Source: Lytechinus pictus (Eukaryota). From it: 64,000 bases of DNA. This document shows, one piece after another, positions 1,786 to 51,958 of this stretch. Made by a program: the position numbers and the translations under genes. The DNA is taken from NCBI RefSeq assembly GCF_037042905.1, contig NC_087262.1:20832001-20896000 (forward strand). The letters run 5' to 3'. The notes beneath the pieces are model-generated. The model did no database searches. It worked only from the letters and a program-made list of their open reading frames with translations, and was not told the DNA's origin. The first letter of the stretch is position 1. Each line of letters starts with the position of its first letter.

Positions 1786-1815
1786 ATGTATATATGTGTA
1801 CATATACTAGTATAT
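1729..1815. repeat. (TA)n microsatellite
   Basis: Near-pure TATATA run with a few TG/TT interruptions; it produces the spurious YIYIYI ORF 1605-1844. Confidence 0.95.
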
Positions 1816-10290: not shown

Positions 10291-10317
10291 GGTGGGCGTG
10301 GCAGAAGTGGGCGTGGC
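10291..10317 (+). promoter_or_regulatory. Tandem GC/GT boxes (Sp/KLF-type) upstream of FUT11
   Basis: GTGGGCGTGGC occurs twice, ~600 bp before the FUT11 ATG, next to a CpG-richer stretch (10560-10870). Confidence 0.4.
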
Positions 10318-10926
10318 ATGCACTGCGATCCTTATCCTCTGGCCCTCATTCCCCGCTTGTTCCCATTTCTTGAAAACTTATCAGTTCGATACAAAGATGA
10401 ACGAGGTGTTACCGCATGGATTACTACTAAAATCATTTACAATACACCTTTGTTGATGATCTAAAGATCTAGAATCTAGATGATGGATACCCCAGGTGGA
10501 TAGGCCGATGTACAAGTTCATAATAATTCTTTTCATGATTTGCTTCCTCCCAAACACAATATCATTAGTAGTGGTGGAGATAACGTGGGAAGTTGCACGT
10601 TGACGATGGATTTGCACTTCCGTATTTTTCGTAAACAAAACGCAAGATAGGCTTTGTCTTTACTTTAGTGCTTATCTCATTTCCGCAACGAAAAAGCCCA
10701 TTCTTTTACGCTCTTATTTCGTGAAGACCCAAGCTCGAAATTAGTTTACTTCCGTCAATAATCCTTTAGTTACTAGCGAGTGGTCTCCTCGCCTCACACA
10801 GTTCACTCGTACTCGCCAACCCCAGCTCCGTCGCGTCGCCAACTGACGAGTTTCGTTGAGAATCCCGACCACTGTGGGGGTGATGCAGATTGTAATGTAA
10901 GCGAGTTCATTAAAAATCTTGCCAAA

Positions 10927-12503: not shown

Positions 12504-12794
12504 GTAAGAATGGAAGGAATAATGTACAATCTATATTGTGGAAAGAGGGAAGAGTTCCTTTTTTGACAGCCACCCAAAGTGAGAAATGTTATATTATGCA
12601 TTCAAATTTTGTATTAGGACCAAAGTTAGGGTTAGGGTTAGGTTTTGGGTGGCTGTTGCGAAAGGTACTCTTTGGGCCTGTGACACAATGCTAATCGATT
12701 GATCAAGCAATTAATCTGTTTGCTTGATTATACGTAATGATCAATGTGATCAAATATTAAAATCAGCCCTATAAATGATAAAGTGTTGAGCTTT

Positions 12795-33200: not shown

Positions 33201-36200
33201 AAAAGTAAAGAACCAAAATGGATTTCCCATTTTTATTTATTGGTAAATTGAAAATCACTGTCCCTACTTTATCATCAAGTAAAGTCACGTTATTGCACCA
33301 TTGGAAATAAAAAAACAAATACAAATTTGCATTATACATGGAATGTAGGAAGAAATATGTTTTTATGCACATTTTTTTTTTGTTTAAAGAGGACGAAAAA
33401 GGGAAAATCGTGTACATTAAACAAACTTATTTAATGATAAGGATTTGATTTGAGCAAAATAACTTGGAAGACGTGTTCCTATACACTTCTTTGTAAAGGT
33501 GAAATTGATCTGCCAAGTAACGTACAAGAGTGCACACACTTTGGTGATAAAATTTGTTTAATTTGGATTTGGCAAGTTCTAAATTTTAATAGGAATACTG
33601 AACATCGACCCATGCCAAGTGTTCAATGTTTTCCTTCATTTTCAATTTCATTTTTCTTAGAAGTTAGTCAATCAAACAGGTCTCATTACATGTAGGAACA
33701 CTGAAGTACTTTTTCTCCAAATAAAAGTTATGCCACTTTGATATTGGTAGAATTTTTCTTATTAATCCATAAATTATTATGATGAATAATATAATTATTG
33801 GGGCTAAAATGTTCATTATTAAAATGGAATTCTATTCCTCTGTTGCCTATTGCTCATACATGTACATGTATGGTGCGAAATACCGAGGTACCTTTTAATA
33901 GGTAATAAAAATAATGATTACACCCCCCCCCCCCCCCATCGGTGTAAATAACATGTTTTGAATTTCTGAATAGCATGGAATCTTCTGTTTTGATTGGTTG
34001 AATATTATGGTCTCAAAGCAAGCCAGTATGAAAGAAAGTGTGTGTCATTGTAAGGTCTGCCCTCATCCAATCACAGTGCATGATTATTAATACTGATAAA
34101 AATTGGTAAATTGCCAACTTGTCTACCTTCATTTAGTCTAATGCCATTCCGTCCATCAACATTTCGTCTAGCAACCATTTGGTCCAATCATCACTTTGCC
34201 TAATCACCATTTCATCAATGACCACTTCGCCTTTTAACCAGTTGGTCTGATATCCATTTCATTTTCATTAATTTCACCCAATGAACACTTAGTCCATTTA
34301 GACCAAATAGGATATGGACTAAATGGCTATTGGACCAACTGGCTATTAGATGAAATGATAAATGAACAAATAAGCATTTAGACCATGTGGATAGTGGACA
34401 AACTGATGTTAGACCAAATGATAGTATACAAGTTGGTAATTGGACGAATTGGCATTAGACTAATTGATCATAATCCATTTTCTGAGACGGCATTGCGTTG
34501 GGGAAAAGAAGCGTGATTTTGACCCAATTAATCTTTGGTTAAAATTCAAGTAATCCTAAAGTACAGATCTTCAGCTTCGCTAATTATAATTTCACATTTG
34601 TATTGCACTGTTTTTTATTAAATGTTGGGGGCAGGGCCCTCAAAAAGTAATGAAAGTAGTAATGAAATAGAGAGCACAAAACAAATAAATATGTTTACAA
34701 TATATACATGTATGCAGTACATCACTACTTTAAAACAGGAGCTCAAAGATTTTCATTTAACAAGAAAAACAATTATTTTTTCATATTCCAAAATCACAAA
34801 TCATGTGACACAATTTTTAACTGGTAAATTGCCAATTCGTCTAATGCCAACTCGTCCACTCACCACATGGTCTACTTTCATTTGGTCTAATGCCGTTCCG
34901 TCCATCAACATTTCGTCTAACAATCATTTGGTCCATTAACCATTTGGTCCAATCATCACTTCGTGTAATCACCATTTCATCTATGACCATTTCGTCTCAT
35001 AACCAGTTGGTCTAATATCCATTTCATTTTCATTCATTTTGCACAATTTAACACTTAGTCCAACTAGACAAATAGGATATGGACTAAATGGCTATTGGAC
35101 CAACTGACTATTAGATGAAATGATGAACAAACAAGCATTTACACCGTGTGGATAGTGGACAAACTTATACCAGTTGGTAATTGGACGAATTGGCATTAGA
35201 CTAATCGATCATAAACCATGTAATTGTTCAGAGATGGCATTTGACCCAATTAATCTTTGGTTAGAATTTAAGTAATCCTAAAGCACAGATCTTCAGCTTC
35301 GCAAATTATAATTTCACATTTGTATTGCACTGTTTTTTAAATTAAATATTGGGGTCAGGGTGCTCAAAAAGTAATGAAAGTACATGTAGTAATGAAATAG
35401 AGCACAAAACAAATAAATATGTTTACAATATGTACATGTATGCAGAATATCACTACTTGAAAACAGGACTTTGAAGCTATTCATTTAACCAGAATTTTTT
35501 TTTCCCTTTTCCAATATCACAAATCATGTGACATAAGTTACATTTAGTTGGTTTCAGGGGACAGTTCCATAAAAGTTGCAATTATGTAAGTGTTGCCATA
35601 GTAACAGTCATGAGAGACCAGTGCTCCCCAGTCAATCAAATCCAAAGAAATTTGTCAGATTTAGGGACTGTTGCCGAAAAAAATGTGTTTAAACGAATCT
35701 CGAATTATCATGAGCAAGTCCATAATACACATATTCCATTGTTTGAAATTTAAGTTGCATTTGATCTTTGGAGTTGCGTTTTATTGTAATCTCTTTCTGC
35801 AACGGGCCCCTGACAACTTATCAGACAACAAATTTTGATGAAATGCCTCCCTGGGCCCCGTTGCATAAAATATTTACTGTTAATGTTTTCTTTGCCATCC
35901 AATGGTGATTACCACGATGACAATGCTTAACAGCCAATCAAAATCAAGGATTCCATAGCAGCTACCGTTAGATGGAAAAGTTGCCATAATGGTAATGTTT
36001 ATGCAATGGGGCCTACATGTAGGTCTGTAACTGAACCTACGTTAAAGTCTATCTTTAGCATTGGTAACTACCCCAAAATCTGGCTATAACTATTACTATT
36101 CATTACTAGATTATATGAATATGTATGCCCTAAAACAGTTAAGATGTGGAGGATATGAGATGAATGTACTGTATGTTTTACAGGGGGAAAAATGTGATTT

Positions 36201-36574
36201 CACATGGAAATGTAGTTTGATCAATATAAAACATCTGTGTGGATTTTTCTATTTGATAGAAAACCTATTCCAAAGCAGGGACAGGACTGAAAATTTCAGG
36301 ATATAATGCTTGTAGCTTTATGATATCCAGTCCCTAAAGTTGCAAGATAAATGTTCAACTTTAGAGCCCTTTTAAAGGAAAACAAAAATACTGCTGATAG
36401 AGGGCACTAGATATGTTTGATGAGAATACTTAAATTTTCACAGAGAATCGCTAGTTGAAAAAAAAATCTAGCCACTACTACAAGTTTGTAAGATTGGAAT
36501 GTAAGATGATACTCAAATATAATTAACATTACTGAGTACTGACCCCTTACCAAAGCTAAGTACAGGCTTCAAAG

Positions 36575-38020
36575 TTAGCAAGCAATCCAACCCTGGTCAC
36601 ACTCACTACAAGTAAATCCACCACAGCACCCACAGGAATGCAAGGGTTCACCATCCGCACCCTTGGCAACAACATGACTTGAAGACATATGAGCATTTGA
36701 TGCCTCAGTTTCTCCAGTACATTTGGCATTAATAGCAGCATATTCAGCACCTGTCCTCTCTTGCACAACTGGTGAGTCTGGTTGCGTCTCAGTGATGCAC
36801 ACTGGTTCTTCTTCTTTTACTTTGACTTTCACTTTGTTCGATTCTCTCTCGCTGGTCCTAGATGGTGTAGAAACATCACTGGGTATGGGAACTGGATTAA
36901 ATGGGTGTATCCCGCATGCCCGGAATCCTAAGGTGGCACTTGCGACCGAAGCAGTTCTCCGCCAAGCTCCTGCGAAAAGTGCGCTAAAGTTGTGCTCTGT
37001 GATGGTTGCTTGTGGATCCTCATGTAATAGTGAATCCCTCACAAATTCCCAGTTGTCCTGCAGTGAATTGAACACACATTGATTCAATGGTTGTAGGTAT
37101 TCCTTGCCACGACTGGGCAAGCAGAACAGGATGATGTCGTGATCGATGCAGTATCGTTGCACCTTAACGCTCTTCACATATGATTTGTGAAGTCCATCGA
37201 TGATAAGTAGCACTTTTCCTTCAACGGCATGCTTGCGAAATAGTTTCAGCCATTTTAGGAATGAGCCTTCGTTGATGGATGATATGTCGGGCAATCCATC
37301 AGAAAACTCCTCCCTCTTCTTTCCATTGAGGATAATGAACGGTGGGATGTACTGACCAGTGGCGCTACAACAAACAACTACTGCAGTCTCCTTGACACTG
37401 TTCTCTGAATTTGTTTCACTAATGCCCGACTTCATCCCTTTTAGCACAAGCGTGGACCCTGAGTGGTTCATCATTGTGAGACTGCACTCGTCAACGTTGT
37501 AAATTTTCTCCGCTGACTGGTGAAAAGACTCCCTGTCCATTATCCCACCAAGGCGATCAAAATATCTTGTAACCTCTTGCAAAGATGGTGCATGAGGCTG
37601 TGACAAGCTATCAGCTTTCCCAAGCACAATGTCAGGATGGCGTATGAGAAAGCCTTCAATCCAGAATTCACTGGCCAATCCAGACTCCCTATCAAAGATA
37701 TGTTCAATGTTTTTGCTTTCTGCAAACTGATAACTAAGTCTACGCACATCGAGTCTGGATAAAATGAAACTGCGTGGTTCCATATCCAGGATAAGGCGTA
37801 CCAACTCAGCTTCATTTTCATCTCCAAACGCAGATTTCCAGCGTTCATGCAATCTAGTTTTCACATCAGCCTCCGAAATTTCACCTACTGTCACTTTCAT
37901 CTTTCCTGTTACTGTAAACTTGTGTACTTTGATTTCTTCTTGCTTCCTTTTATTGACGGCTCCGGACATATCTGTACGAGGTCTGGGAGCATCTGATTTC
38001 ACCAAACGTTCACAAATTAT
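36575..38020 (-). CDS. pogo/Tigger-derived protein (CENP-B-type HTH + DDE_1 fold), probable domesticated terminal exon
   Basis: Uninterrupted 481 codons; HTH-type segment ENEAELVRLILDME...DVRRLSYQFAE...WIEGFLIRHP, IYNVDE, CCSATGQYIPPFII..GK, LLIIDG, LPS...YLQPLN; polypyrimidine-TAG acceptor directly before 38020 (phase 0); no TIRs seen. Confidence 0.88.
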   Translation of the reverse strand: MICERLVKSDAPRPRTDMSGAVNKRKQEEIKVHKFTVTGKMKVTVGEISEADVKTRLHERWKSAFGDENEAELVRLILDMEPRSFILSRLDVRRLSYQFAESKNIEHIFDRESGLASEFWIEGFLIRHPDIVLGKADSLSQPHAPSLQEVTRYFDRLGGIMDRESFHQSAEKIYNVDECSLTMMNHSGSTLVLKGMKSGISETNSENSVKETAVVVCCSATGQYIPPFIILNGKKREEFSDGLPDISSINEGSFLKWLKLFRKHAVEGKVLLIIDGLHKSYVKSVKVQRYCIDHDIILFCLPSRGKEYLQPLNQCVFNSLQDNWEFVRDSLLHEDPQATITEHNFSALFAGAWRRTASVASATLGFRACGIHPFNPVPIPSDVSTPSRTSERESNKVKVKVKEEEPVCITETQPDSPVVQERTGAEYAAINAKCTGETEASNAHMSSSHVVAKGADGEPLHSCGCCGGFTCSECDQGWIAC

Positions 38021-38983
38021 CTATAATAAGAGAAATATAATACATATCTGATTTACAACACGGTCTTTGATAAAATGACCGAAACACATTCTTTACAAAT
38101 TAAAATGTGGTTTCTACACTTATATAAAAGGTAAAGAAATTGTGAATGTGTCATGGAAAGAATCTAGTCCTTTGAAGCTGTTACAGAGTTTGTCAAGTTA
38201 TACATCATTTATATACTGAACATTCTTGTGCTAAATCACGCACACAATATTTCAATGGCATTTTAAAGGGACGGATTAACTTTTATTTGTCAAAAATATG
38301 GTAAAAACATATACAGTACCTCTAAAAGAATGAGGGGTTTCATTACTTTGTTACACAGTACACTACAGGAATGGTTGCCAATACTTGTGCTAAATGAGAT
38401 AATCAAAATTTATTCCTTTTTAACATATATTGGGAGTGCATTCATATTATTTTGAAGGGGAGGGGTAGTAAATAAAAAGTAAACCCCCCCAAAAAAGAAT
38501 TTTTAAAATTTGTAAAGAAAAACCAAACACAATTACAGCAAAACCGTAATGGTTCAGAGCTCTGTATTACCTTTGCTTTAGTACAAGCCTTGCTTTCTAG
38601 TTGATTACTTCTCTTTAGAGGTGCTATGCCAGGAGATAACCTCTTGTTGATTGCAATGCATGCAGGGAACCTAGGGTAACAGAGTTTGAATGAATACTTT
38701 ATTTCATCACATTGGTACATCAAAAATAGAATCGTATCAAGGCTTGGTAGAATGCAAAGATATTAATTTGGGGATCACTCATTTCTTTCTATCACTCTTT
38801 TTTTTTTTATATAAACCATAGGGCTGCCATTTAACAAATGTGTTTGATAACAGAATAGAGCATAAGATATCGCATACATACACACCCAAGGTTTACTGCC
38901 ACTTGATCTACAATACATTTATCTCTTGCCTATTTGGTCTCATTTCACATGGTCTAATCTCCTTTTGTCTATAAACCAATTCA

Positions 38984-39176
38984 GTGACACTACCTTTGCT
39001 CCAGTGACACTTGCTCCAGGGTTTATTTCATCTAAGATAGGGTTAGGGTTGTAATAAGGTCTTATGTTGTGTTTAGGATGAGGTATAGTGTTAAATCCAG
39101 GGCTACAGTAAGTCACTTGATTAGAGCGTGGAATTTATAGCGGAGCAATTGTTGCCAGAGCAAATGCCATGGAACC
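38984..39176. mobile_element. Small dispersed repeat with TTGCTCC/GGAGCAA inverted motifs and TAGGGTTAGGGTT core
   Basis: Repeated CTTGCTCCAG at the left end, GGAGCAA/GAGCAAATG at the right end. Confidence 0.55.
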
Positions 39177-39468
39177 ACAAATTCATTGACATAAAAAATT
39201 GTCTAATTGTCATTTGGCCCATTTTGTCTAATTTCCAGTTAGGCTATGACTAATATCTAATTGGTCAAACACCACTACAACTTAACATCAATAGGCAAAT
39301 ACCAAGATTTTCATATATACATACATTAGCAAGTTGGCTTCTGTATTTCCGAATACACAATTAAAAAAATTCAGTTGACAGAAAAGGAAAAAGTAAGTAG
39401 ACAAAGACAAACTGACAAAGTAACAATTAGCCTTGTCAGCAACATCATACATGATGTCATTTGATAAA

Positions 39469-39667
39469 TTATTCCTGTGAGTCATACTTGTGTGCATGGA
39501 GTGCTGCAGAAGGTGTGTGTCCAGAGTCAACAGGTTTGTTGTCTATCTCAGTGATGTCTCCAGAAACACTGCAGGAGTCTGATGCTTTGACACACATCAC
39601 AGGATGGTTATGTGTAAAAGACAGCCGGATCACTGTTGGTAGCTCTCCGACGTGAACATCCAATGAC
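39469..39667 (-). CDS. MULE-transposase-derived cassette, last exon
   Basis: TTTTAG acceptor, phase 2 matches the previous exon; (R)SLDVHVGELPTVIRLSFTHNHPV...SGHTPSAALHAHKYDSQE*; HNH and GH.P..AL...KYD motifs resemble the N-terminal part of animal MULE/SWIM transposases. Confidence 0.72.
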
Positions 39668-40460
39668 CTAAAATAAAATGTATACAAAAAATAGTGATAA
39701 TAATAATGGTATTTTATTTCAAGAATGTTCGCAGCATGATCTGAAATGTACAGAGCTTGTACATATAAAAACAAACGAAAATGTAACTACTTTATACAAT
39801 GTGGCGTTAATGATCAAATTTCCTGCATAAAGGTTCGTCCTATTCCTATTCTTTAGATTCTGAAATCTTCTTTTTTTCTGGAGTACCAGTATATAGACTA
39901 AGAATATCACACTGACTTCATGTCTGTGAGTTAAATTGTATGCTTACAAAGTAATACTACTACATGAAACAAACTGGTGGATGATAGTGGATATTGGTAA
40001 CTTAGATTTCAATAGATTAATTTTATTCTTTTTTTTTTGTACTGATTCTGGATGATTCCCAAGTCCCCGCTACATCTCTACTTCTTACCAAAATTCTCAT
40101 CTCGGTACATGTAGTGTTCTCCCCCTGGTGCTATGAAACGAGTGCTCATATAAGAATAAAAAATAATGATTATAAGTCCCATAGTTCATTAAAGTAACAG
40201 ACTTGATACCATGAGTGGTGCCAGAACATCTAGAGCCCATTTCAAAAGGCTGACAACTATTGTGACTTTGCCATTAAAACTACCATGGTAACAGGGCTCG
40301 ACAGCCAATCACATTCAAGGACTCCATACAAGTTAGTTACAATAATGGCAAAGTAACTTACATTAAAGGGGCGAATCATTGTGTGTAAACAATGGGTCGA
40401 CCCTCAACTCTTCTGAATCGAACATTCTGGACCCACTGGTTACAATGTACAGTAGCCTAC

Positions 40461-40786
40461 CTGTTTCTCTTGGGCACCCGTTTGACAGCGATACCCAGAG
40501 TGGCCGGGCAGTTGGTGATCTTAGTCCTAGAACTTGAACTGACGGGACGGGATTTACGGAAACTGCCATGCTGACACCGGTAATGTGCACTGAAGATATT
40601 CTTGAGCCCACCTGCCTTCCCCGTCCATAATAATCGCAGATTTGTACGCGTCTTTTCCTGGAACAGCCTGAGCCAAGTACGAGCATTACACTCAGTCTTT
40701 ATATCCAACCTGAGGAGAGCAGTGATGCCTTCATCAATGATGTCAAACTGACAAACGGTATAGTTGTACCCATCAGGCAACAACTC
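40461..40786 (-). CDS. MULE-transposase-derived cassette, middle exon
   Basis: CTTCAATAG acceptor (phase 0), AG|GTAGGC donor (phase 2); ELLPDGYNY...YRCQH...TKITNCPATL, the first half of a WRKY/FAR1-like Zn finger. Confidence 0.75.
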
Positions 40787-42771
40787 CTATTGAAGAGACA
40801 TACAAATCTAATGAAAATAATCTATTGATCACATTTATGGCCTTGTAAAAATCCTTGAAAACTACAGTATGACCCCATTTTTTGTTTAGAGCAATGAGAT
40901 TATTACTACTGAGGCAAAAATGAACAACAACAAAACTTTGCTATTACCCGATAAACCTGCCAGCTTTGATATTTTATTAAAGTAGATATGGAAAAAGAAA
41001 ATAAATATTGTGACAGGCACTATTTTCCGTAATTCTCATAATTTCCTAATATTAAAATTAACATATGCCTCTTCAATGATCTTGGTTTCTAAAAGGCACC
41101 CTCCCCCCCCCCCCCAATATCCCAGTGCGTATTGAGTGTAACAAAGCTTGCATGCCCTTGCAAAATTTCTCCTATCCAATTAATGGCCTTATTTTTCTCA
41201 AATCTCCTAAAATAAAAGACCTTATCTAGATTCTAGTACCAGTCCTGAAATTTTAAATGAAAATAAAAACATTTAGCCTATAAATAATATTAAAAATAAT
41301 TTTGATTGGCACATTTATTCCCTTATCACTTAGTTGTTTAAAAACAAATTACAATCAACAACACCTAGCCTGACCAATCTCAAACTTCAAAAGACAAATA
41401 CAGCTAACACTGTCTGAAAGAAATAAATAAATATAGAAATCGATTAAATAGACATTTTAGAAAGGAGGACTTGGAAATGTATAGGAAAAAGAAAGCATAT
41501 GCCCCAAAAATAAAGAGACGAACATAAAAGGAATACTGGTTAAATTACTGTCAGTCTTTGTGGAGAACATCCAACTTTATAGGAAAAGTATGGGAAAAGG
41601 TAAAAGGACTACAAAATGGTTCTGTCTCAAAACATATATTTCCCAATTTATTAACAGAAAACAATACACCAGTAGCTAATGCTCAAGAAAAGGCAGAATT
41701 TGTTGCTAAGGCTTTTAAAACAATAGACAATCGATTAGACAATGACGAGATTATTAGAAGAAATTCATTTGAAAATTTAATACAAAATACGATCAAAGAA
41801 AGCTGCTCCTCTGAATCACCTCTTTATGATGAATTTACATATAATGAATTAACAAGCGCTGTTACAGAAATGAAAAAATCTGCAGCAGGAACATATGGTA
41901 TCAAATCAATTATGACACAACACCTACCAAAAATAGCTCTTCAGTTCATATTAGTTTTAGTAAACAATATTTGGAATTCCTCAATTCTACCCTCAGATTG
42001 GCATTATTCTATCCAGATCCCTGTACTTAAACCAGGTAAAGACCCAACAAACCCTTCTTCATATCGACCTATTTCCTTGACATCAACTTTCTCCAAACTG
42101 ATGGAAAGAATGGTTAAAAATAGACTTGTATGATTCATGGAGCGATGCAGTATCCTGACACCAACACAGGCTGGATTTAGAAAAAATAGAAGTTCTTTAG
42201 ATCAGCTCCTCAGATTAGAAACGGACATACATGTACAGAAAGGATTAGCTAACAAGGAGTATGTCCTAGTTATTTTCATTGACCTTGAAAAGGCATACGA
42301 CCTTTTATGGAGAAAGGGAATAGTATTTAAATGTCATCAAGCTGGTATAAAAGGAAAAATGTTACAGTGGATTAATTCATTTTTACAAGATTGATATTGC
42401 AAGGTAAAAATTAATGGCCAATTATCTTCACAATTTGTTCTGGACAATGGAACGCCCCAAGGTAGCACTTGTTATTAGTCAAATTTTGTTCAATTTAATG
42501 TTGAATGATCTAAAACTGATAGAAAAATCTGTAAAAATCTCTATGTATGCCGATGATATTGCCGTATGATGCTCAGGCAGAAATCTTGACTTTTTACAAA
42601 AGAAAATGCAGAAAGCTATAAAAGAAATTGAACAGTGGTGCTCAACCTGGAGTATGACTATTTCTCCTCAAAAGTCTGCTGTTATGATTTTTACCAATAG
42701 GCATATAGATGTATTAATTTTCAGGTTAAAGATAACTCTATACCACAATACAAAGAATATAAGTTACTGGG

Positions 42772-44206
42772 ATCGGAGAGCGCCCTCGACGCTGATGAAT
42801 CGTTTCTAATTTTGCTCAACCTAATCTGACGGTTTTTAGCCAAAAACTGTGTAATGGACGAGTAAGTACTTCTTTTTGAAGTATTCTTTTCATTCTTTGG
42901 TGTTAAGAAAAAGGAAAAAGATGGATCAGAAAAGGCAATCCTGCTCGGACGGACAAAACTCTCCCTCCAAACCGGCACCCAAACGAGTAGCAGGCCCGCT
43001 GGACTTTACTGGTGAATTTGACAAATATGCAGATGTAGTTGACGGCCCCCCGAGCTGGTTTCTACGTTTCTTTGAGGGTTTTGAGAAGCGTCTAGATGAA
43101 AAGATTGCAAAAAGGTTGGATGAAGTGTGTCTTAAACTAAAGGAGCATGATGAATGTGTCTCAGCCTGTTCACTTCAAATTGACACTTTGGAGAACGAAA
43201 TCCAAGTTTTAAAGAAGGAGAGATCGAATCTTGAAATCAAACTTGATGACTTGGAAAATAGGAGCCGTAGGTGTAATCTGGTGTTTCACGGCATCCCAGA
43301 AAGCCCTAGAGAGAATTGCCAGGCTGCTATGCAAAATATGCTGACAACCTTCGTTGGTCTGGCTGCTGGTGACTTTGTTATTGAGCGTTGCCATCGTACT
43401 CCGAATACACCGCTTCCCAGAGCTGATCATCAGAACGAGAAGAGGTCTCCGCGTATCATCCATGCAGCATTTTCCTCCTACTCCAACAAAGAGAAAGTTC
43501 GCAAGGCATGTGTAGCTAAATTCAAGGCAGAGCGTTTCAATGGAAGCAAGATATTTGTGAGCGATGACTACTCCAAGAGGGTCATTAACATGAGGAAGGA
43601 AAAAATGGGGAAGTTCAAGCAGTTGAAAGAGAAAAATAAGAGACCATTCTTCCTCTATCCTGACCGTCTTGCTTTCAGATCAGGAGATGGGAAGTTGCAC
43701 TTTGTTCAGTAACTGTGACTCTGACTGTTTGACACGTTTATTTCACTTTCTTGATCAATCATTTTTTACTGTTTAGAAAACGAGAAATTACATGTGTTTT
43801 TGTTGGGTTGTTTTTAATGCCAACCTTATGTATTTATCATTTGGCCACTCTTGCTTATTTTTATGTCTTAGTGTTTTCGAGAGAGTAGTAGTGGGGTAGT
43901 GCCCCTTTCATGCTTATGTGGCATTTGTGTTTTGTCTTTGTGTTTTATAGCTTATATTTAGACTGTGCTGATTTTTTTTAACGTAGGCCTTAAACCTGCC
44001 AGATACTCTATAGATTCATATTCGTTAGCCCCTGTCCAAAGGTTTGGACTTGCTGTTTTTTGCAAAGCCATTTTTTGATTTGAGGCTTTGCCCCCACCTT
44101 TGCGCAGCTGCGCCCTTTTGTATATACTTCCTTTTTAATAGTTTTTTTCTTTCTTTCTTTCTTATATTGATTCAATAAAACACATTTTAAAAAAATTTAA
44201 AATAAT
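42772..44206 (+). mobile_element. ORF1-only (HAL1-like) non-autonomous retroelement inserted in the LINE RT domain
   Basis: Flanked by AAGAATATAAGTT(A/T)CTGGG (42753-42771, 44207-44225); AATAAA at 44174 followed by an A-rich tail; no ORF2. Confidence 0.85.
42921..43712 (+). CDS. L1-type ORF1p-like protein (coiled coil + RRM + CTD), 263 aa, intact
   Basis: Heptad region, then LDDLENRSRRCNLVFHGIPE, IERCHR, PRIIHAAF, IFVSDDYS, FLYPDRL. Confidence 0.88.
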   Translation: MDQKRQSCSDGQNSPSKPAPKRVAGPLDFTGEFDKYADVVDGPPSWFLRFFEGFEKRLDEKIAKRLDEVCLKLKEHDECVSACSLQIDTLENEIQVLKKERSNLEIKLDDLENRSRRCNLVFHGIPESPRENCQAAMQNMLTTFVGLAAGDFVIERCHRTPNTPLPRADHQNEKRSPRIIHAAFSSYSNKEKVRKACVAKFKAERFNGSKIFVSDDYSKRVINMRKEKMGKFKQLKEKNKRPFFLYPDRLAFRSGDGKLHFVQ

Positions 44207-46452
44207 AAGAATATAAGTTTCTGGGTATTTGGTTTGATGTGAAACTCACCTGGAAAAAGCACATCGATTATATAAAACTCAAATGTTAAAAAAGAATCAA
44301 TTTGTTACGGTGTATAGCAGGAACAAGTTGGGGAAATAATAAAACGATTCTTTATATAATATACAAAGGTCTTATTAGATCCATATTAGACTACAGATGT
44401 GAGTTATACGACTCGGCTAGCCTTTCGCTAAAACAAGAATTAGATTCAATCCAATATCAGTCACTGAAAATAATAACTGGTGCAGTATATAACCTGCCCT
44501 TGAAGCACTACAGGTAGAATGTGGTGAAAGACCTTTACAACTAAGAGAACTGTCAGTTGACAAATACATGTTTAATGTTTTATCTTTTAACAGAGATACT
44601 CATCATCCTACTTTAGAAATTATTGAACCTTCCTGGTATATTAATCAATTTACTTGGAAATCAGGTCGTGGACCCTTTGTAGTCAGAGCACGTAAGCCAA
44701 ATGAAGAGATCCAAATTGAACAACTAAGCCAAAGAATATTACGAGAACATTTTTGGTCATATGAAATACCTAATATATCTTACTATATCCATAAGATTAT
44801 CAATAAACAACGTAACTTAGTACAAGATATGAAAAACTGTGTCTCAGAAAGGATACATACAAGATGGAAAGGTTACTTAAAGATCTACACTGATGGATCA
44901 AAACAAGAAGACAAGAGAACCAGCTCTGCTTTTTATATACCAGAACTGGATATTAAAATATTCTATAGATTAAATTCTGTAAGTATAATGAGAGCCGAAT
45001 TAACAGCAATGGTAATGGCACTTGATTGGCTAGGAGATAACAGAGGTATGTCCTTGGTAATTTTTACAGATTCGTTGTCTGCTCTTCAAGAACTCAAAAG
45101 CAATCGTATACAAAACAATCTTATTGTTGATATCTTGTATAAAATCAAAGTTTTACAATCATCAGATATTCATGTCAATTTTGAATGGATACCATCCCAT
45201 TGTGGTATTCACGGGAATGAAGTGGCAGACCTTTTAGCCAAAAAAGGAGCATCAAAAGAACAAGTTGAATTAAACATTCCATATATCAAAGAGGAATGGA
45301 ATACCCACATGTCTTTGATTTATAAAGATGTCTGGCAGGCTCAATGGGTATCTTCATCTAAAGGAAGACATTTATTTAGCATCCAACCCAACGTGGCAGA
45401 TACAATTAGTTATCAAGGTCTCATTCGGTTTGAAGAGACTATGATACACCGTTTAAGACTCGGAAAATGTAAATTGAATTATTATCTGTCTAAATGTAAT
45501 CAACATGAAAATGGTCTATGTTCCCATTGTCAGGTTCCTGAGACTATAGAACATTTTTACTACAATGTAAGAAATATGAAAGAGAAAGAAGAATTATGCA
45601 AAGAAGCCTGAAATTAAACAAGCCAGATCTAGCAACATTATTGGGTAGAAATGCAGATTATAAAGTCATCCTGAATGATGTGAAAAAAACAAAGAGATTC
45701 GAATAAGAATATTCCACTGATCTCTCTCCATATCTTTCTCTCTGTCTTCCTTTTGTTCTGATGATTAGTGATAATTCTTAGACTACTAAAATTGAGCTTC
45801 GACCTAGCTTCTTATATAAGTTTGCATACTATGAAGTACAAAAACGCACAATTTAATGGTGGAGGTAACTAATCTTAATTATATTGCACCTCGCTATATG
45901 TCAATATGACAGGCCAGACTAGGACTAACGCAAAGGACCCGGACATTGAAGCGGGAATTAAGTAACTAACTCGGAAACGACCTGGCGCAGATAATCTACT
46001 AGATTGAAGAGCACCAACTTAACTCCAACACCAACCAACTGTCTGACTCTGACTCGCAATACGTGTGAGTGGATTCGATTCTGCACAGCCACATGCCGCA
46101 ATTACCATGGTTACTGGACCAGGCCAGAATTCGAATCCCTGCATCAACTGAAGATCATGTCCTCATTAATTGCTAACACAGAAATTTTAAAAAATTGGGT
46201 GATAATAATAAGAAAATTAAATTAAAAGCGCTTTCGCACGGCCTAAGTCTCTAGTCTAAGAAGTTATGAAGCAGTGTTCCACAACCTGTTCCGAACACTC
46301 TCGGCCCCCGCACGGGATGGCGCAGGGCCAGCTGCGGGGCGATGATCCGGCCGGTGTCCCCAAAACCCACTAATTTCGGTCTGTATTACTAAATGGAATA
46401 CTTGCGAAAGTTGAAATTATTTCATAAATATTTTATGTGTCAGGCAACTTAC

Positions 46453-46545
46453 ACACAATCTTGTTATCTCAGAATTGACACCACATCTGTCCAAACACTC
46501 ATCTTCGGTGCAGAAATCCAATTTTGTCTTCCAGTTTGGGTCCAT
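46453..46545 (-). CDS. Candidate first coding exon of the minus-strand transposase-derived locus
   Basis: ATG at 46545, MDPNWKTKLDFCTEDECLDRCGVNSEITRLC, consensus donor GTAAGT, phase 0; CpG-richer flank at 46230-46380. Confidence 0.62.
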
Positions 46546-46800
46546 TCTTGATTGATGCAGTCGACTATCTCCGCAACTAACTGTAGATGGCGCTATTCCA
46601 ATTGAGCCAGAGTTATCAATAGACAAATTGAGCCAGGCCTTGACTTGAGCCAGAGTACATTCCTCTAATTAACCTTTAAAATAATCTTTTAGCCTTTTTT
46701 TTTTCTTGTACAATTATGTGCAAAAGAGATTTATTTCTATTCTGTTCAGGAAAAAAGTCATCTTTTACAAAGTCTTTTATTTGTTGATTGAAATATTTTG

Positions 46801-47220
46801 TTTTCTCTCTCTGCTTTCACATTGTTATGGAAGAGAAACTGGGCAGTTAACTTCATTTGTAATAATTTGTAATCTCATTGATATTGATTTATTTATTTGT
46901 TTCGTATACAGTCATGTACAAAATCTTTATTTATATGAATTGTGATTGTAAACTTATTGATTTGAAAGAGGAAGAAAATAAAATATTATTAAAAAAAAAT
47001 AGGACTAGGTTTTTTTTTTCTCTCTGCTTTCACATTGTTATGGAAGAGAAATTGAGCAGTTAACTTCACTTGTAATGATTCTGAAAATTTGTAATATCAT
47101 TGATATTGATATATTTATTTGTTTCGTAGTCATGTGCAAAATTTTGATTTATATGAATTGTGATTGTAAACTTATTGATTTGAAAGAGGAAGAAAATAAA
47201 ATAAAATATTATTTTAAAAA
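46801..47220 (+). repeat. ~215-bp two-copy tandem repeat
   Basis: CTCTGCTTTCACATTGTTATGGAAGAGAAA...GAAAGAGGAAGAAAATAAAATA occurs at ~46809 and ~47022. Confidence 0.9.
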
Positions 47221-48104
47221 AAGTAAATACTCAGAATTGAGCAAGAGCTTCGGTTCGGGAACCTGCATGGATCAAACAACACTCCTCCCAACTCCTGGTT
47301 TCGTAAAAAGACTTGTCTGAAAAGTAAGTTTTACCCAATAGTAACCTTAGAAATTGTGCTTCTTAAACAATTAAAATTAAGAAAAATTGTCAGATCTGAC
47401 TACTTGTCGGATAAAAATGTTAATGATACGCTCCATATCAAAGTTGTTTGTCAGACAAGTTCCACAAAAATTTATGAAACGCTGGTCTTCTTGAACTTGC
47501 ATGCATGTCATCACAGGATACATTATTCGCGATCTCCTCCCCTTCTGAACCATGCTATTCAACCCCTCCCCCTTCCTATATAAGTTTCCCTAATGAAACT
47601 GAAGATTTTTATAAGCTCGCATGGTCGTGGTCGCTACGCCCCTTCAGATTTTTCGGGGGGGGGGGTTAGTACTTATAATGGCTGAGTTATGCGATTTAAA
47701 CGGCAGAAAAGATGTCATAACTACCAATATTAGAGAGATTTGGAGATAGGGGAGATGTGATTGTAAGACTGAGAGGGGGGAATTAAAATGGGGATGCCGT
47801 TGATGTGAGTGGTAAGTGGTGGAAGATGTTGAGAGACGGAGGATGGTCGGAGGGATAAGGGATTGAGGATGGTAAAAGGGAGGAGAGATGATGAGAGAGA
47901 TCTGACGGTATATAAAGAGAGGATGGTTATAGAGAAGGGAAATGGAAAAAGGGTGGTATAGATGTTATGGTAACAGATAGAGGATGGTGAGAGGAGAGAG
48001 GAAGGATATTTAGGATAGATAATCAAAGAGATGGGGATGGTGAGAAGGAAATATGGTATAAGAAAGGTGTGGTGATCAAAGAGATAGAGGGATGCAAGTA
48101 GAAG

Positions 48105-51085
48105 ATATAGAGGATGGTGAGGGGGTGGATGTATGGTAGGTGAGATGTGATGGTAAGAGATAGAGGATGGTGAGAGGGGGAGGATGTATGGTAGGTGAGA
48201 TGTGATGGTAAGAGATAGAGGATGGTGAGAGAGGGAGGATGTATGGTAGGTGAGATGTGATGGTAAGAGATAGAGGATGGTGAGAGGGGGAGGATGTATG
48301 GTAGGTGAGATGTGATGGTAAGAGATAGAGGATGGTAAGAAGGGGAGGATGTATGGTAGGTGAGATGTGATGGTAAGAGATATAGGATGGTGAGAGGGGG
48401 AGGATGTATGGTAGGTGAGATGTGATGGTAAGAGATAGAGGATGGTGAGAGGGGGAGGATGTATGGTAGGTGATATGTGATGGTAAGAGATAGAGGATGG
48501 TGAGAAGGGGAGGATGTATGGTAGGTGAGATGTGATGGTAAGAGATATAGGATGGTGAGAGGGGGAGGATGTATGGTAGGTGAGATGTGATGGTAAGAGA
48601 TAGAGGATGGTGAGAGTGGGAGGATGTATGGTAGGTGAGATGTGATGGTAAGAGATAGAGGATGGTGAGAGGGGGAGGATGTATGATAGAGAGATGTGAT
48701 GGTAAGGGATAGAGGATGGTGAGAAGGGGAGGATGTATGGTAGGTGAGATGTGATGGTAAGAGATAGAGGATGGTGAGAGAGGGGGAGTGTGTATGGTAG
48801 GTGAGATGTGATGGTAAGAGATAGAGGATGGTGAAAGGGGGAGGATGTATGATAGAGAGATGTGATGGTAAGGGATAGAGGATGGTGAGAAGGGGAGGAT
48901 GTATGGTAGGTGAGATGTGATGGTAAGAGATAGAGGATGATGAGAGAGGGGGAGGATGTATGGTAGGTGAGATGTGATGGTAAGAGATAGAGGATGGTGA
49001 GAAGGGGAGGATGTATGGTAGGTGAGATGTGATGGTAAGAGATAGAGGATGGTGAGAAGGGGAGGATGTAAGGTAGGTGAGATGTGATGGTAAGAGATAG
49101 AGGATGGTGAGAAGGGGAGGATGTATGGTAGGTGAGATGTGATGGTAAGAGATAGAGGATGGTGAGAGAGGGGGAGGATGTATGGTAGGTGAGATGTGAT
49201 GGTAAGAGATAGAGGATGGTGAGAAGGGGAGGATGTATGGTAGGTGAGATGTGATGGTAAGAGATAGAGGATGGTGAGAAGGGGAGGATGTATGGTAGGT
49301 GAGATGTGATGGTAAGAGATAGAGGATGGTGAGAAGGGGAGGATGTATGGTAGGTGAGATGTGATGGTAAGAGATAGAGGATGGTGAGAAGGGGAGGATG
49401 TATGGTAGGTGAGATGTGATGGTAAGAGATAGAGGATGGTGAGAGAGGGGGAGGATGTATGGTAGGTGAGATGTGATGGTAAGAGATAGAGGATGGTGAG
49501 AAGGGGAGGATGTATGGTAGGTGAGATGTGATGGTAAGAGATAGAGGATGGTGAGAAGGGGAGGATGTATGGTAGGTGAGATGTGATGGTAAGAGATAGA
49601 GGATGGTGAGAGGGGGAGGATGTATGGTAGGTGAAATGTGATGGTAAGAGATAGAGGATGGTGAGAAGGGGAGGATGTATGGTAGGTGAGATGTGATGGT
49701 AAGAGATAGAGGATGGTGAGATGGGGAGGATGTATGGTAGGTGAGATGTGATGGTAAGAGATAGAGGATGATGAGAAGGGGAGGATGTATGGTAGGTGAG
49801 ATGTGATGGTAAGAGATAGAGGATGGTGAGAAGGGGAGGATGTATGGTAGGTGAGATGTGATGGTAAGAGATAGAGGATGGTGAGAAGGGGAGGATGTAT
49901 GGTAGGTGAGATGTGATGGTAAGAGATAGAGGATGGTGAGAGGGGGAGGATGTATGGTAGGTGAGATGTGATGGTAAGAGATAGAGGATGGTGAGAAGGG
50001 GAGGATGTATGGTAGGTGAGATGTGATGGTAAGAGATAGAGGATGGTGAGAAGGGGAGGATGTATGGTAGGTGAGATGTGATGGTAAGAGATAGAGGATG
50101 GTGAGAGAGGGGGAGGATGTATGGTAGGTGAGATGTGATGGTAAGAGATAGAGGATGGTGAGAAGGGGAGGATGTATGGTAGGTGAGATGTGATGGTAAG
50201 AGATAGAGGATGGTGAGAAGGGGAGGATGTATGGTAGGTGAGATGTGATGGTAAGAGATAGAGGATGGTGAGAGGGGGAGGATGTATGGTAGGTGAGATG
50301 TGATGGTAAGAGATAGAGGATGGTGAGAAGGGGAGGATGTATGGTAGGTGAAATGTGATGGTAAGAGATAGAGGATGGTGAGAAGGGGAGGATGTATGGT
50401 AGGTGAGATGTGATGGTAAGAGATAGAGGATGGTGAGAGGGGGAGGATGTATGGTAGGTGAGATGTGATGGTAAGAGATAGAGGATGATGAGAAGGGGAG
50501 GATGTATGGTAGGTGAGATGTGATGGTAAGAGATAGAGGATGGTGAGAAGGGGAGGATGTATGGTAGGTGAGATGTGATGGTAAGAGATAGAGGATGATG
50601 AGAAGGGGAGGATGTATGGTAGGTGAGATGTGATGGTAAGAGATAGAGGATGGTGAGAGAGGGGGAGGGTGTATGGTAGGTGAGATGTGATGGTAAGAGA
50701 TAGAGGATGGTGAGAGGGGGAGGATGTATGATAGAGAGATGTGATGGTAAGGGATAGAGGATGGTGAGAAGGGGAGGATGTATGGTAGGTGAGATGTGAT
50801 GGTAAGAGATAGAGGATGGTGATCGGTGGAGGATGTATGGTAGGTGAGATGTGATGGTAAGAGATAGAGGATGGTGAGAAGGGGAGGATGTATGGTAGGT
50901 GAGATGTGATGGTAAGAGATTGAGGATGGTGAGAGAGGGGGAGGGTGCATGGTAGGTGAGATGTGATGGTAAGAGATAGAGGATGGTGAGAAGGGGAGGA
51001 TGTATGGTAGGTGAGATGTGATGATAAGAGATAGAGGATGGTGAGAGGGGGAGGATGTATGATAGAGATATGTGATGGTAAGAGA
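48105..51085 (+). repeat. 55-bp purine-rich minisatellite, roughly 54 copies
   Basis: Unit GGTAGGTGAGATGTGATGGTAAGAGATAGAGGATGGTGAGAAGGGGAGGATGTAT with slightly longer and shorter variants; degenerate purine-rich flanks from 47730 to 51150. Confidence 0.97.
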
Positions 51086-51958
51086 TGATAAGAGGATATG
51101 GTGAGAGAGGCATGGTATAAGAGATATGTGATTATATAAAGTGGAGATGGATATAGCCTAATTGTTGTTTGGTGGATCAATCAATGAATTTCATTTTATT
51201 GTCCACATGGAAATTCATTTTATACATTAACATTTTGTAATAAAATGTTACATAATATATCACATGCATAGATGTAATTATACAAAAATTACATTAGAAA
51301 TTTACAAATACAAGGGATGTACGCTGGATTATAGCATTCGGATATCGAATTTTTTTTCTTACATCCTCGCGGAAGATAAAACAAGACTATTTCGACTTAA
51401 ATCCGGCAATCTGACCACCCTCCCCCTTCCCCTTCTTGGGACCTGGGAGTTAAAGTAGGCCCACGCCTACATCCCCAAATATTATCTTAATCTCCAAGTT
51501 TATCAATAATCCTTGGGCTGACGCGGACTCAATCTGAGAGCTTCTTAGTTTGATTTGATGAATGAAAAGTGCATTGAGCTTTTCCTTTACAAGTCCCTAA
51601 ATATAAACATCATACAAAGACAGAACCTCAATGGGACCAGCATTTGCATGCCAAAGCGGTCAAGAAAAAAGTAGCACAACCCATTCAGCAGGTGCACTCA
51701 AACGTGCATGAAGTCGGATTCCCAACGGATGTTTTCATGAAATGCTTTAAAATCACATTTCCTACAAAATCATGACAGAAATTATTTCACCTTAAAATTT
51801 AAGGCTTTAATGATTACATAATTTATGATGTTAAGTAACTCATTGTAGAAACACGCAATTTTAATTATTGTTATACCATTATTCATTATCAAAAGTTTTG
51901 GAACCGATTCGCTTTTCGACCCCCTTCCTTTACCCCTATTCAAGAACTATTGACGTTA

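What the first reader, a model, noticed from the sequence alone, without database searches (positions are those of the whole stretch)
36575..46545. One leader exon, two transposase-derived 3' cassettes from different superfamilies (MULE and pogo)
Seen: a 31-codon ATG exon (46545-46453) ends in a phase-0 GTAAGT donor. Two downstream minus-strand acceptors are phase 0 and open long clean frames: 40786 (with exon 39667-39469, giving 205 aa) and 38020 (giving 512 aa). No strong phase-0 donor joins the MULE cassette to the pogo exon, and the MULE cassette has its own stop. Knowledge: the first cassette has the YRCQH..NCPA..HNH zinc-finger pattern of MULE transposase N-termini; the second is CENP-B-HTH + DDE_1. 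Inference: a host gene makes two transposon-derived DNA-binding proteins by alternative terminal-exon choice, with a pogo gene captured as an exon trap behind an already domesticated MULE gene. Both frames and all splice sites are intact while the neighbouring LINE is full of stops.
Basis: partly seen in the sequence, partly recalled or inferred. Interest (0 to 1): 0.85.

Follow-up and report, generated by a model that had tools for sequence, protein, structure and literature searches.

The report
Sea urchin MULE–pogo transposase fusion gene

Summary
It missed a 100-nt exon (38670-38571, minus strand) and a phase-2 donor at 39488, 19 nt before the "own stop". With these, exons 46545-46453 / 40786-40461 / 39667-39488 / 38670-38571 / 38020-36575 form one 714-codon ORF. 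That ORF is 714/714 identical to RefSeq XP_054774036.2 (Lytechinus pictus LOC129282133, "uncharacterized").

One spliced RNA contig joins exons 2-3-4-5. It continues 82 nt beyond the exon-2 acceptor, and stranded raw RNA reads cross the 3-4 junction. Nothing supports a 46453->38020 junction or a transcript end after 39469 in L. pictus.

- **N-terminal part:** it is homologous to the N-termini of MULE/SWIM transposases, keeps the C-C-H-H ligands and has a WRKY-like fold.
- **C-terminal part:** it is a pogo/Tc1-mariner-type DDE_1 protein with D-D-N (E-D-N in L. variegatus) and a decayed first HTH.
- **Copy number:** all parts are single copy and there are no TIRs.
- **Conservation:** L. variegatus keeps every splice site and the open frame, and all indels are multiples of three. 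dN/dS is 0.29 (p = 8e-12).

It is a domesticated transposase-transposase fusion made by splicing capture. It is a new member of a known kind and only moderately interesting.

The parts
46453..46545 (-). Exon 1 (CDS part): ATG plus 30 codons, phase-0 donor TGT|GTAAGT. Residues ~10-31 already align with the N-terminus of the MULE-type family.
   Evidence: Sequence. Identical to the start of XP_054774036.2. Its 31-mers are held by the same RNA-contig runs that hold the spliced contig. Family alignment. The junction to exon 2 is inferred from the 82 nt of contig beyond 40786, not seen directly.
40787..46452 (-). Intron 1. It contains a fragmented + strand LINE (about 41420-45700; RVT_1 and RNase_H pieces) with a nested insertion at about 42753-44225.
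   Evidence: ORF list and Pfam.
40461..40786 (-). Exon 2: first two thirds of the MULE-type WRKY-GCM1-like zinc-finger domain. The Zn ligands are Cys102 (40576-40574) and Cys124 (40510-40508). It ends in a phase-2 donor CAG|GTAGGC.
   Evidence: RNA contigs of X1, X17 and X6 cover it and stop exactly at 40786. dN/dS 0.09, p = 1.5e-4.
39488..39667 (-). Exon 3: last strand of the zinc finger (His159 at 39612-39610, His161 at 39606-39604) plus a diverging tail. The donor CAA|GTATGA lies inside the ancestral Lys-Tyr-Asp codons of the MULE family.
   Evidence: Joint 39665/7->40459/61 in X1 and X17 contigs. Joint 38668/70->39486/8 in X1 and X17 contigs and in 5 stranded raw RNA reads of X19. Family alignment runs up to the stop.
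39469..39471 (-). It is reached only if the 39488 donor is not used, and is intronic in the observed transcript.
   Evidence: Zero depth at 39268-39443 in X19, X17 and X6. The same read-through stop ends the L. variegatus RefSeq model LOC121432165.
38571..38670 (-). It encodes FPACIAINKRL...KACTKAK. It is unique in the genome and varies in length in multiples of three between alleles and species.
   Evidence: Joints 38020->38571 (X1) and 38668->39486 (X1, X17, X19). Conserved with both splice sites in L. variegatus. Unique by DNA search.
36575..38020 (-). Exon 5 CDS: a nearly complete pogo transposase ORF (481 codons plus stop).
- The HTH_psq remnant is decayed.
- The second HTH is intact.
- The DDE_1 core has Asp (37492-37490), Asp (37198-37196) and Asn in place of the third Asp (37084-37082).
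- The tail is disordered and ends in a Cys-rich motif.
   Evidence: Pfam. Alignment to pogo transposases P0002 and P0003. AF2 model and Mos1/SB/SETMAR fold matches. Single copy. dN/dS 0.26, p = 1.7e-10.
35934..36574 (-). 3' UTR (minimum extent). The X1 contig runs 166 nt beyond 36100.
   Evidence: table 8, record 1. The end point was calculated and not seen directly.
38984..39177 (.). High-copy ~195-nt interspersed repeat inside intron 3. It is not part of the gene product.
   Evidence: 2283 first-look candidates, 79-83% identity. Deep multi-source coverage.

Best explanation
The stretch is one five-exon gene on the minus strand (Lytechinus pictus LOC129282133). Its main transcript joins all the pieces into a single 714-aa chimeric protein.

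**Architecture**
- Exons 1-3 are the 5' fragment of an intron-bearing Mutator-like (MULE) transposase gene. They encode its N-terminal WRKY-GCM1-type C-C-H-H zinc-finger DNA-binding domain. The MULE catalytic and SWIM parts are gone.
- A splice donor lies inside the old Lys-Tyr-Asp codons, 19 nt before the truncating stop. It leads through a 100-nt linker exon into an acceptor just upstream of a nearly whole pogo transposase ORF.
- The pogo part has lost the third catalytic Asp (D-D-N). Its first HTH (psq) has decayed. It keeps its second HTH and the RNase-H-like core.

**Inferred function**
- The product is probably a nuclear, non-catalytic, sequence-specific DNA-binding protein of the CENP-B/POGZ/TIGD type.
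- In it, a MULE zinc finger would have taken over from the decayed pogo HTH, and the dead DDE core would serve as a scaffold or dimerisation module.

**Shown versus inferred**
- Shown: the exon structure, splicing of exons 2-5, the homologies, single copy number, conservation and purifying selection between two species.
- Inferred: the exon 1-2 junction, DNA binding, loss of catalysis and the order of events.

The confidence given is for the single-fusion-gene structure. The functional reading is less certain, at about 0.5.
For: **Gene model**
- The five-exon ORF is 2145 nt with no internal stop. It is 714/714 identical to XP_054774036.2.

**RNA evidence**
- The X1 contig (2776 nt) maps as 36100-38020 | 38571-38668 | 39486-39665 | 40459-40786. 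All skipped stretches have CT..AC ends, which is GT..AG on the minus strand. A further 82 nt lie beyond 40786.
- X17 shows the 2-3 and 3-4 joints.
- Five stranded raw RNA reads of X19 cross the 3-4 joint. All exonic X19 reads are in one orientation and the unique intron bins have no depth.
- Exon-1 words are held by the same runs.

**MULE identity of the N-terminus**
- phmmer found 233 hits, and the ~800-aa hits score E 1e-26 to 1e-20.
- 22 of 50 long hits carry PF10551 MULE. Others carry the ZSWIM1-3 RNaseH-like or SWIM domains. None carries DDE_1.
- W69, C102, C124, H159 and H161 are invariant.
- The AF2 model has pLDDT 81. Its best low-rmsd matches are AFT2 (Z 6.3, 2.5 A) and the RRS1 WRKY domain (Z 6.2, 2.7 A over 73/73 residues). 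The Swiss-Prot AFDB hits are CaRF, WRKY proteins and FRS6/10/11.

**Pogo identity of the C-terminus**
- DDE_1 scores 41-43 bits against a cutoff of 22.
- It is 45-48% identical to transposases that carry HTH_psq plus DDE_1.
- The fold matches Mos1 (3e-8), Sleeping Beauty and SETMAR.

**Domestication**
- Every part is single copy in the 812-Mb genome, and the nearest paralogues are 33-38% identical.
- There are no TIRs.
- The triad is D-D-N in L. pictus and E-D-N in L. variegatus.
- L. variegatus keeps all four splice-site pairs of exons 2-5 and an intact 680-codon frame. Its indels are +3, -12, +6 and -6 nt.
- dN/dS is 0.29 overall (Fisher p = 8e-12). CDS identity is 0.934, against 0.80-0.88 in the introns and 0.71 in the 3' UTR.
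Against: - The exon 1->2 junction was not seen directly, because exon 1 lay outside the single 6-kb read-laying run.
- Raw-read depth is low (1-3x, about 6% of one run read), so minor isoforms cannot be excluded.
- RefSeq annotates the L. variegatus locus as two genes, of 202 aa and 462 aa.
- Exon 3 shows dN/dS of about 1.1 (14 N, 4 S). The second half of the MULE module may therefore be decaying or changing fast.
- Pfam finds no FAR1, FLYWCH, HTH_psq or Tc5 HTH in the protein.
- The WRKY fold matches are only Z ~6. The tool's own note calls that a middling range.
- No experiment bears on DNA binding or function.
Confidence: 0.85

Rival explanations
1. The leader exon is spliced either to 40786 (MULE cassette, own stop, 205 aa) or directly to 38020 (pogo, 512 aa), which gives two proteins by alternative terminal-exon choice.
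For: Both joins keep the frame. Skipping exons 2-4 removes 606 nt, which is 202 codons, so it is frame-neutral. The read-through stop position is kept in L. variegatus.
Against: - The only observed partner of acceptor 38020 is 38571.
- The exon-3 donor at 39488 is used in two contig runs and in raw RNA reads.
- There is no depth at 39268-39443.
- RefSeq lists one product without isoform labels.
- Exon 4 is conserved with its splice sites and has only in-frame indels.
Confidence: 0.04
2. Two independent genes, as annotated in L. variegatus: a short MULE-finger gene (202/205 aa, ending at the read-through stop) and an intronless pogo-derived gene with its own promoter that starts at Met 'MSGAVN' (462/464 aa). 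On this view the fusion contig is a minor read-through product.
For: RefSeq LOC121432165 and LOC121431840 in L. variegatus. An in-frame ATG lies 17 codons into exon 5.
Against: - In L. pictus the depth of exons 2-4 equals or exceeds that of exon 5 in X19, X17 and X1. This argues against a separate, stronger pogo transcript.
- In L. variegatus the 17 codons upstream of that ATG, the acceptor, exon 4 and the 39488-type donor are all conserved and in frame. That is unexpected for intergenic DNA, where identity is 0.71-0.88.
Confidence: 0.08
3. Both a fusion transcript and the parental short MULE-only transcript are made. The locus would be a young transposase capture caught while the parental isoform persists. 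This is compatible with the best explanation but adds a second product.
For: - The short form is a RefSeq model in L. variegatus.
- The 32 nt after the stop are fully identical between the species, more so than the coding DNA before it.
- Young host-transposase fusions often coexist with the parental transcript (Cosby et al., 10.1101/2020.05.07.082677).
Against: There is no L. pictus read or contig depth downstream of 39469 in unique sequence. I saw no canonical AATAAA in the first ~270 nt after the stop (read by eye, not scanned).
Confidence: 0.25
4. A transcribed but functionless chimera: a decaying pair of transposon relics spliced together by chance.
For: Exon 3 has dN/dS of about 1.1 and exon 4 about 0.39 (not significant). 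Allelic divergence within L. pictus is very high (38/714 aa between the two RefSeq versions). The psq HTH and the C-terminal tail have decayed.
Against: - dN/dS is 0.09 in exon 2 (p = 1.5e-4) and 0.26 in exon 5 (p = 1.7e-10).
- All six indels seen between species or alleles keep the frame.
- All splice sites are conserved across dS = 0.16.
Confidence: 0.07

Closest known systems
Host-transposase fusion genes formed by splicing capture (Cosby et al. 2020/2021; e.g. KRABINER, SETMAR, PGBD3-CSB, POGK)
   Same: The transposase ORF sits in its own exon and is entered through an acceptor just upstream of the ORF. It is joined by splicing to upstream exons of a pre-existing gene. The gene is kept under purifying selection and orthologues exist in related species.
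   Different: - The upstream partner is itself a truncated transposase gene of another superfamily (MULE), not a KRAB, SET or other host-type domain.
- It lies in an echinoderm and not in a tetrapod.
- Almost the whole transposase, including the DDE core, is retained, not just the DNA-binding domain.
- I could not test whether the acceptor came with the transposon, because no family consensus is available.
Domesticated pogo transposases (CENP-B, JRK/TIGD, POGZ, POGK; S. pombe Abp1/Cbh) - from my own knowledge
   Same: It has a DDE_1 core with an incomplete catalytic triad, a retained CENP-B/Tc5-like HTH region, single copy number and no TIRs.
   Different: The first (psq-type) HTH is partly deleted and is predicted to be disordered. 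A WRKY-GCM1-type finger is grafted on the N-terminus. No orthologue was found outside Lytechinus.
MULE-derived host genes with the N-terminal WRKY/FAR1-type finger (plant FHY3/FAR1/FRS; animal ZSWIM1/3; CaRF as a fold match)
   Same: The N-terminal C-C-H-H finger is homologous to that of MULE/SWIM proteins, and the fold hits include FRS6/10/11 and CaRF.
   Different: The MULE core and the SWIM finger are absent. Pfam FAR1/FLYWCH models do not hit. The finger is followed by a pogo body instead.
ZBED9/SCAND3-type multi-element chimeras - from my own knowledge, not tested here
   Same: One host gene is assembled from domains of more than one mobile-element class.
   Different: The element classes differ (retroviral-type SCAN, integrase and hAT there; MULE and pogo here), and so does the lineage.

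Membership tests
pogo / Tc1-mariner-type DDE transposase (as origin of exon 5) | DDE_1 domain above Pfam gathering score | tested here: met
   41.1 bits (window) and 43.4 bits (P0001) against a cutoff of 22.
pogo / Tc1-mariner-type DDE transposase (as origin of exon 5) | RNase-H-like transposase fold | tested here: met
   Foldseek PDB: Mos1 3.4e-8, Sleeping Beauty 6e-6, SETMAR/Metnase TMt 0.66. The core pLDDT is mostly 80-95.
pogo / Tc1-mariner-type DDE transposase (as origin of exon 5) | Intact D-D-D catalytic triad | tested here: not met
   Asp, Asp, Asn in L. pictus and Glu, Asp, Asn in L. variegatus. Relatives P0002, P0003, P0004 and P0006 have D-D-D.
pogo / Tc1-mariner-type DDE transposase (as origin of exon 5) | N-terminal paired HTH (psq plus Tc5/CENP-B type) | tested here: inconclusive
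   - No Pfam HTH hit.
- The psq region carries 14- and 9-residue deletions and has pLDDT below 45.
- The second HTH region aligns with pogo relatives and is helical at pLDDT 84-94.
Active pogo transposon | Terminal inverted repeats and multiple copies | tested here: not met
   The best flanking inverted repeat is 22 nt at 73%. The sequence is single copy and the next best genomic match is 33% identical at protein level.
MULE (Mutator-like) transposase (as origin of exons 1-3) | N-terminal region homologous to that of proteins carrying the MULE domain | tested here: met
   phmmer E 1e-26 to 1e-20 to ~800-aa proteins. 22 of 50 long hits carry PF10551, 7 carry ZSWIM1-3_RNaseH-like and 4 carry SWIM.
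MULE (Mutator-like) transposase (as origin of exons 1-3) | WRKY-GCM1-type C-C-H-H zinc finger | tested here: met
   C102, C124, H159 and H161 are invariant in 34 sequences. The fold support is moderate only: AFT2 Z 6.3 at 2.5 A, RRS1 WRKY Z 6.2 at 2.7 A over 73/73 residues. WRKY, FRS and CaRF hits appear in AFDB.
MULE (Mutator-like) transposase (as origin of exons 1-3) | MULE catalytic domain (PF10551) and SWIM finger | tested here: not met
   Absent from the protein. tblastn with nine family members found no relic elsewhere in the 64-kb window at E<=0.01.
MULE (Mutator-like) transposase (as origin of exons 1-3) | Hit to Pfam FAR1 or FLYWCH DNA-binding models | tested here: not met
   No family at E<=5 for residues 1-235.
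Host-transposase fusion gene by splicing capture | Spliced transcript joining upstream exons to the transposase exon | tested here: met
   The X1 contig joins exons 2-3-4-5. X17 and raw reads of X19 support individual joints.
Host-transposase fusion gene by splicing capture | Orthologous conservation under purifying selection | tested here: met
   L. variegatus is syntenic, keeps all splice sites and an intact frame. dN/dS is 0.29, p = 8e-12.
Host-transposase fusion gene by splicing capture | Upstream partner is a non-transposon host gene | tested here: not met
   Exons 1-3 are themselves MULE-derived.
   - Exon 1 lay outside the laid stretch, so the junction could not be seen or excluded directly.
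- Acceptor 38020 was seen joined only to 38571.
- No depth lies at 39268-39443.

The most novel reading that the evidence does not exclude
A Lytechinus-restricted regulator was built by grafting the DNA-binding finger of one transposase superfamily (MULE) onto the body of another (pogo), whose own first HTH then decayed. That would be a swap of DNA-binding module between superfamilies. The locus may still be in the transitional state in which the parental short MULE-only transcript (205 aa) coexists with the 714-aa fusion. That would make it a tractable non-vertebrate model of transposase capture, in a species where gene knock-outs are feasible.
Probability: 0.25. Interest if true: 0.55.

Novelty: new member of a known kind. 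Interest (0 to 1): 0.4.

Why it matters
Exon shuffling can combine modules from two unrelated transposase superfamilies into one conserved host protein. Known cases join a transposase to a conventional host domain, and known cases come mostly from vertebrates. The gene is annotated only as "uncharacterized". RefSeq also treats it inconsistently: it is one gene in L. pictus and two in L. variegatus, although the L. variegatus DNA keeps every splice site and the frame. The comparison therefore also flags a probable annotation split. L. pictus is used as a genetic model, so binding sites and a knock-out phenotype could be obtained.

Tried and rejected
- **Pfam on split exons and on residues 1-235:** no family for the N-terminal part. 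Its identity came from the exhaustive phmmer search instead.
- **The look-up of encoding contigs for the L. pictus protein P0001:** not on record. I used the L. variegatus locus through P0166 instead.
- **DNA of the closest pogo transposases (P0002, P0003):** not retrievable. I therefore could not test whether the 38020 acceptor pre-existed in the transposon, nor find its TIRs. In P0002's contig the next ORF has a faint PHD hit. This fits the idea that the Cys-rich tail is a PHD relic, which I did not test.
- **TIR search around exon 5:** only weak matches at chance level.
- **Relics of the MULE core downstream:** none in the window.
- **Foldseek against PDB for the N-terminal model:** nothing at E<=0.001. 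WRKY-type matches emerged only with the structural re-alignment and with AFDB.
- **Literature searches for pogo or MULE domestication in sea urchins and for WRKY-pogo fusions:** nothing specific.
- **The search of earlier findings by words:** nothing.
- **First try at the exon-3 end:** I placed it one base off and corrected it.
- **Organism B in the read-laying run:** exons 3 and 4 had no depth in the organism-B run X6. I attribute this to divergence below the 90% cutoff and draw no conclusion from it.

Full report
**1. The observation**

- Exon 1 (46545-46453) is ATG plus 30 codons and ends TGT|GTAAGT.
- The acceptor at 40786 is phase 0. Exon 2 ends at 40461 in a phase-2 donor, exon 3 starts at 39667, and an in-frame TAA ends at 39469. 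With the leader this gives 205 aa.
- The acceptor at 38020 is phase 0 and opens 481 codons to the stop at 36575. With the leader this gives 512 aa.

Pfam finds DDE_1 in the last exon (1.8e-10). The LINE between exons 1 and 2 is real and broken: RVT_1 and RNase_H fragments lie on the + strand.

**2.

A protein search with the pogo exon returned a 711-aa Lytechinus pictus protein (P0001, 96% identical). It carries the leader, the MULE cassette, 30 extra residues and the pogo part in one chain.

The extra residues map to a 100-nt exon at 38670-38571 (cctAG|GTTCCC...GCAAAG|GTAATA). This exon is entered from a donor CAA|GTATGA at 39488, 19 nt before the "own stop".

The five exons give 2145 nt and 714 codons with no internal stop. 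The product is identical at 714/714 positions to XP_054774036.2, LOC129282133 of L. pictus. The window is therefore L. pictus, and RefSeq already predicts this model, named only "uncharacterized protein".

**3. RNA evidence (one call allowed, window 36100-41350)**

- One contig of run X1 (2776 nt) maps as 36100-38020 | 38571-38668 | 39486-39665 | 40459-40786. Every skipped stretch has CT..AC ends, which is GT..AG on the minus strand.
- The same contig runs 82 nt past 40786 and 166 nt past 36100.
- Run X17 independently shows the 2-3 and 3-4 joints.
- Five raw reads of the stranded RNA run X19 cross 38668->39486.
- All exonic X19 reads share one orientation, and the unique intron bins have zero depth.
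- Depth over exons 2-4 is as high as over exon 5, so no separate, stronger pogo transcript is visible.
- The bin 39268-39443, where a terminal exon ending at the 39469 stop would have its 3' UTR, is empty in X19, X17 and X6.

Exon 1 lay outside the stretch, so the 46453->40786 junction is inferred from three things. The contig leaves the genome exactly at 40786 with 82 nt to spare. The same runs hold 7 of 11 sampled exon-1 words. The RefSeq model is identical. The only partner seen for 38020 is 38571.

**4. Identity of the N-terminal part**

- Pfam has no hit for it.
- An exhaustive phmmer search gave 233 hits. The long ones (~750-1000 aa) match with their first ~200 residues at E 1e-26 to 1e-20.
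- 22 of 50 long hits carry PF10551 MULE. Others carry ZSWIM1-3 RNaseH-like or SWIM. None carries DDE_1.
- W69, C102, C124, H159 and H161 are invariant.
- The AlphaFold model has pLDDT 81. Its best low-rmsd structural matches are AFT2 (Z 6.3, 2.5 A, 74 residues) and WRKY domains (RRS1 Z 6.2, 2.7 A, 73/73). Z ~6 is only moderate. The Swiss-Prot AFDB hits are CaRF, WRKY proteins, AFT2 and FAR1-related FRS6/10/11.

Three further points follow.
- Homology begins at about residue 10, so the "leader" is part of the MULE-derived gene and not a separate host exon.
- Homology runs right up to the stop (window HKYDSQE*, family HKYDLQ). The donor GTATGA therefore lies in ancestral Lys-Tyr-Asp codons.
- Paralogous multi-exon MULE-type genes in the same genome share the intron-2 position.

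No MULE core or SWIM relic remains in the window.

**5. Identity of the C-terminal part**

- It has DDE_1 above threshold.
- It is 45-48% identical to transposases that carry HTH_psq, a weak Tc5 HTH and DDE_1.
- The fold matches Mos1, Sleeping Beauty and SETMAR.
- Exon 5 starts about where those transposases start, so almost the whole ORF was captured.
- The triad is D-D-N, and E-D-N in L. variegatus.
- The psq region has two deletions and is predicted to be disordered. The second HTH and the core are confident, and the last 100 residues are disordered.

**6. Gene or transposon?**

- Exon 2, exon 3 and exon 5 each occur once in the 812-Mb genome, and the next matches are 33-38% identical.
- Exon 4 and its introns are unique apart from a ~195-nt high-copy repeat in intron 3.
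- No TIRs were found.

The L. variegatus locus (L025) is syntenic. It keeps all four acceptor/donor pairs of exons 2-5 and a 680-codon open frame. Its indels are +3, -12, +6 and -6 nt.

| Segment | dN/dS (Nei-Gojobori) | Fisher p |
|---|---|---|
| Exon 2 | 0.09 | 1.5e-4 |
| Exon 3 | 1.14 (14 N, 4 S) | not significant |
| Exon 4 | 0.39 | not significant |
| Exon 5 | 0.26 | 1.7e-10 |
| All | 0.29 | 8e-12 |

dS is 0.16. CDS identity is 0.934, against 0.80-0.88 in the introns and 0.71 in the 3' UTR.

RefSeq nevertheless splits L. variegatus into LOC121432165 and LOC121431840. The second is 462 aa and starts at the internal Met. Given the conserved splice sites and frame, I read this as an annotation split or as a sign of a coexisting short isoform. 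I do not read it as evidence for two unrelated genes.

No closer homologue of either part turned up outside Lytechinus.

**7. Mechanism**

- Shown: one spliced mRNA carries a MULE finger, a linker and a pogo body in one frame. The gene is conserved and constrained in two species.
- Inferred: a pogo element landed downstream of a MULE-derived gene, or within it and truncated it. An acceptor just upstream of its ORF, together with a donor inside the MULE exon and a new linker exon, produced the fusion. This is the transposase-capture route described for vertebrates (10.1101/2020.05.07.082677).
- Inferred: the product is probably a non-catalytic, sequence-specific DNA-binding protein.

**8. Verdict**

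The alternative-terminal-exon reading is not supported, while the exon-trap and domestication part is. The locus is a new member of the class of domesticated or fused transposase genes. Its unusual feature is that it combines two superfamilies. The gene model already exists in RefSeq without a description. Interest is moderate.

Noticed in passing
L025 (L. variegatus CM031032.1:7911330-7932718), 1-7938 and 10001-11389: RefSeq splits the orthologous locus into two genes (LOC121432165, 202 aa; LOC121431840, 462 aa). The DNA nevertheless keeps exon 4, all splice sites and one open frame through exons 2-5. This is probably an annotation split.
   Followed up: yes
window 36575-46545 (whole gene): Allelic divergence within L. 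pictus is very high.
- The two RefSeq versions of the protein differ at 38 of 714 positions.
- The X1 RNA contig differs from the window by about 4% in exon 5.
- X17 holds two haplotypes.
- Exon 4 has at least three in-frame length variants: the window, a -3-codon form in XP_054774036.1, and a +1-codon form in X1/X17 at 38607.
   Followed up: partly
window 39440-39487: The ~32 nt just after the read-through stop (AATAATTTATCAAATGACATCATGTATGAT) are identical between L. pictus and L. variegatus, which is more conserved than the coding sequence before them. They may be a splicing or 3'-end control element.
   Followed up: no
window 48102-51086: A 55-nt minisatellite of 54 copies at 95% match, with extreme GC skew. 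It creates spurious ORFs of more than 1000 codons on the minus strand, about 1.5 kb upstream of exon 1.
   Followed up: partly
window 46797-47203: A 218-nt unit is repeated 1.9 times, 250 nt upstream of the start codon in the presumed promoter region.
   Followed up: no
window 38984-39177 and about 40278-40320: Short interspersed repeats lie in introns 3 and 2. The first has more than 2000 first-look candidates genome-wide at 79-83% identity. Both draw very deep, mixed-strand RNA coverage that does not belong to this gene.
   Followed up: partly
window 42753-44225 (ORF 42876-43712, + strand): An insertion is nested inside the intron-1 LINE and carries an intact 278-codon ORF with no Pfam hit. 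Another first-stage note reads it as an ORF1-only half-LINE.
   Followed up: no
window 10780-12507 (+) and 2094-4415 (+): There is an uninterrupted 575-codon ORF with both fucosyltransferase (GT10) domains. A separate LINE ORF carries endonuclease and RVT_1.
   Followed up: no
G000:C20:3171900-3182700 (L023/L024) and loci L018-L022: Several multi-exon MULE/SWIM-type paralogues lie in the same genome and share the intron position of this gene's intron 2. The family is either intron-bearing transposons or a set of domesticated genes.
   Followed up: partly
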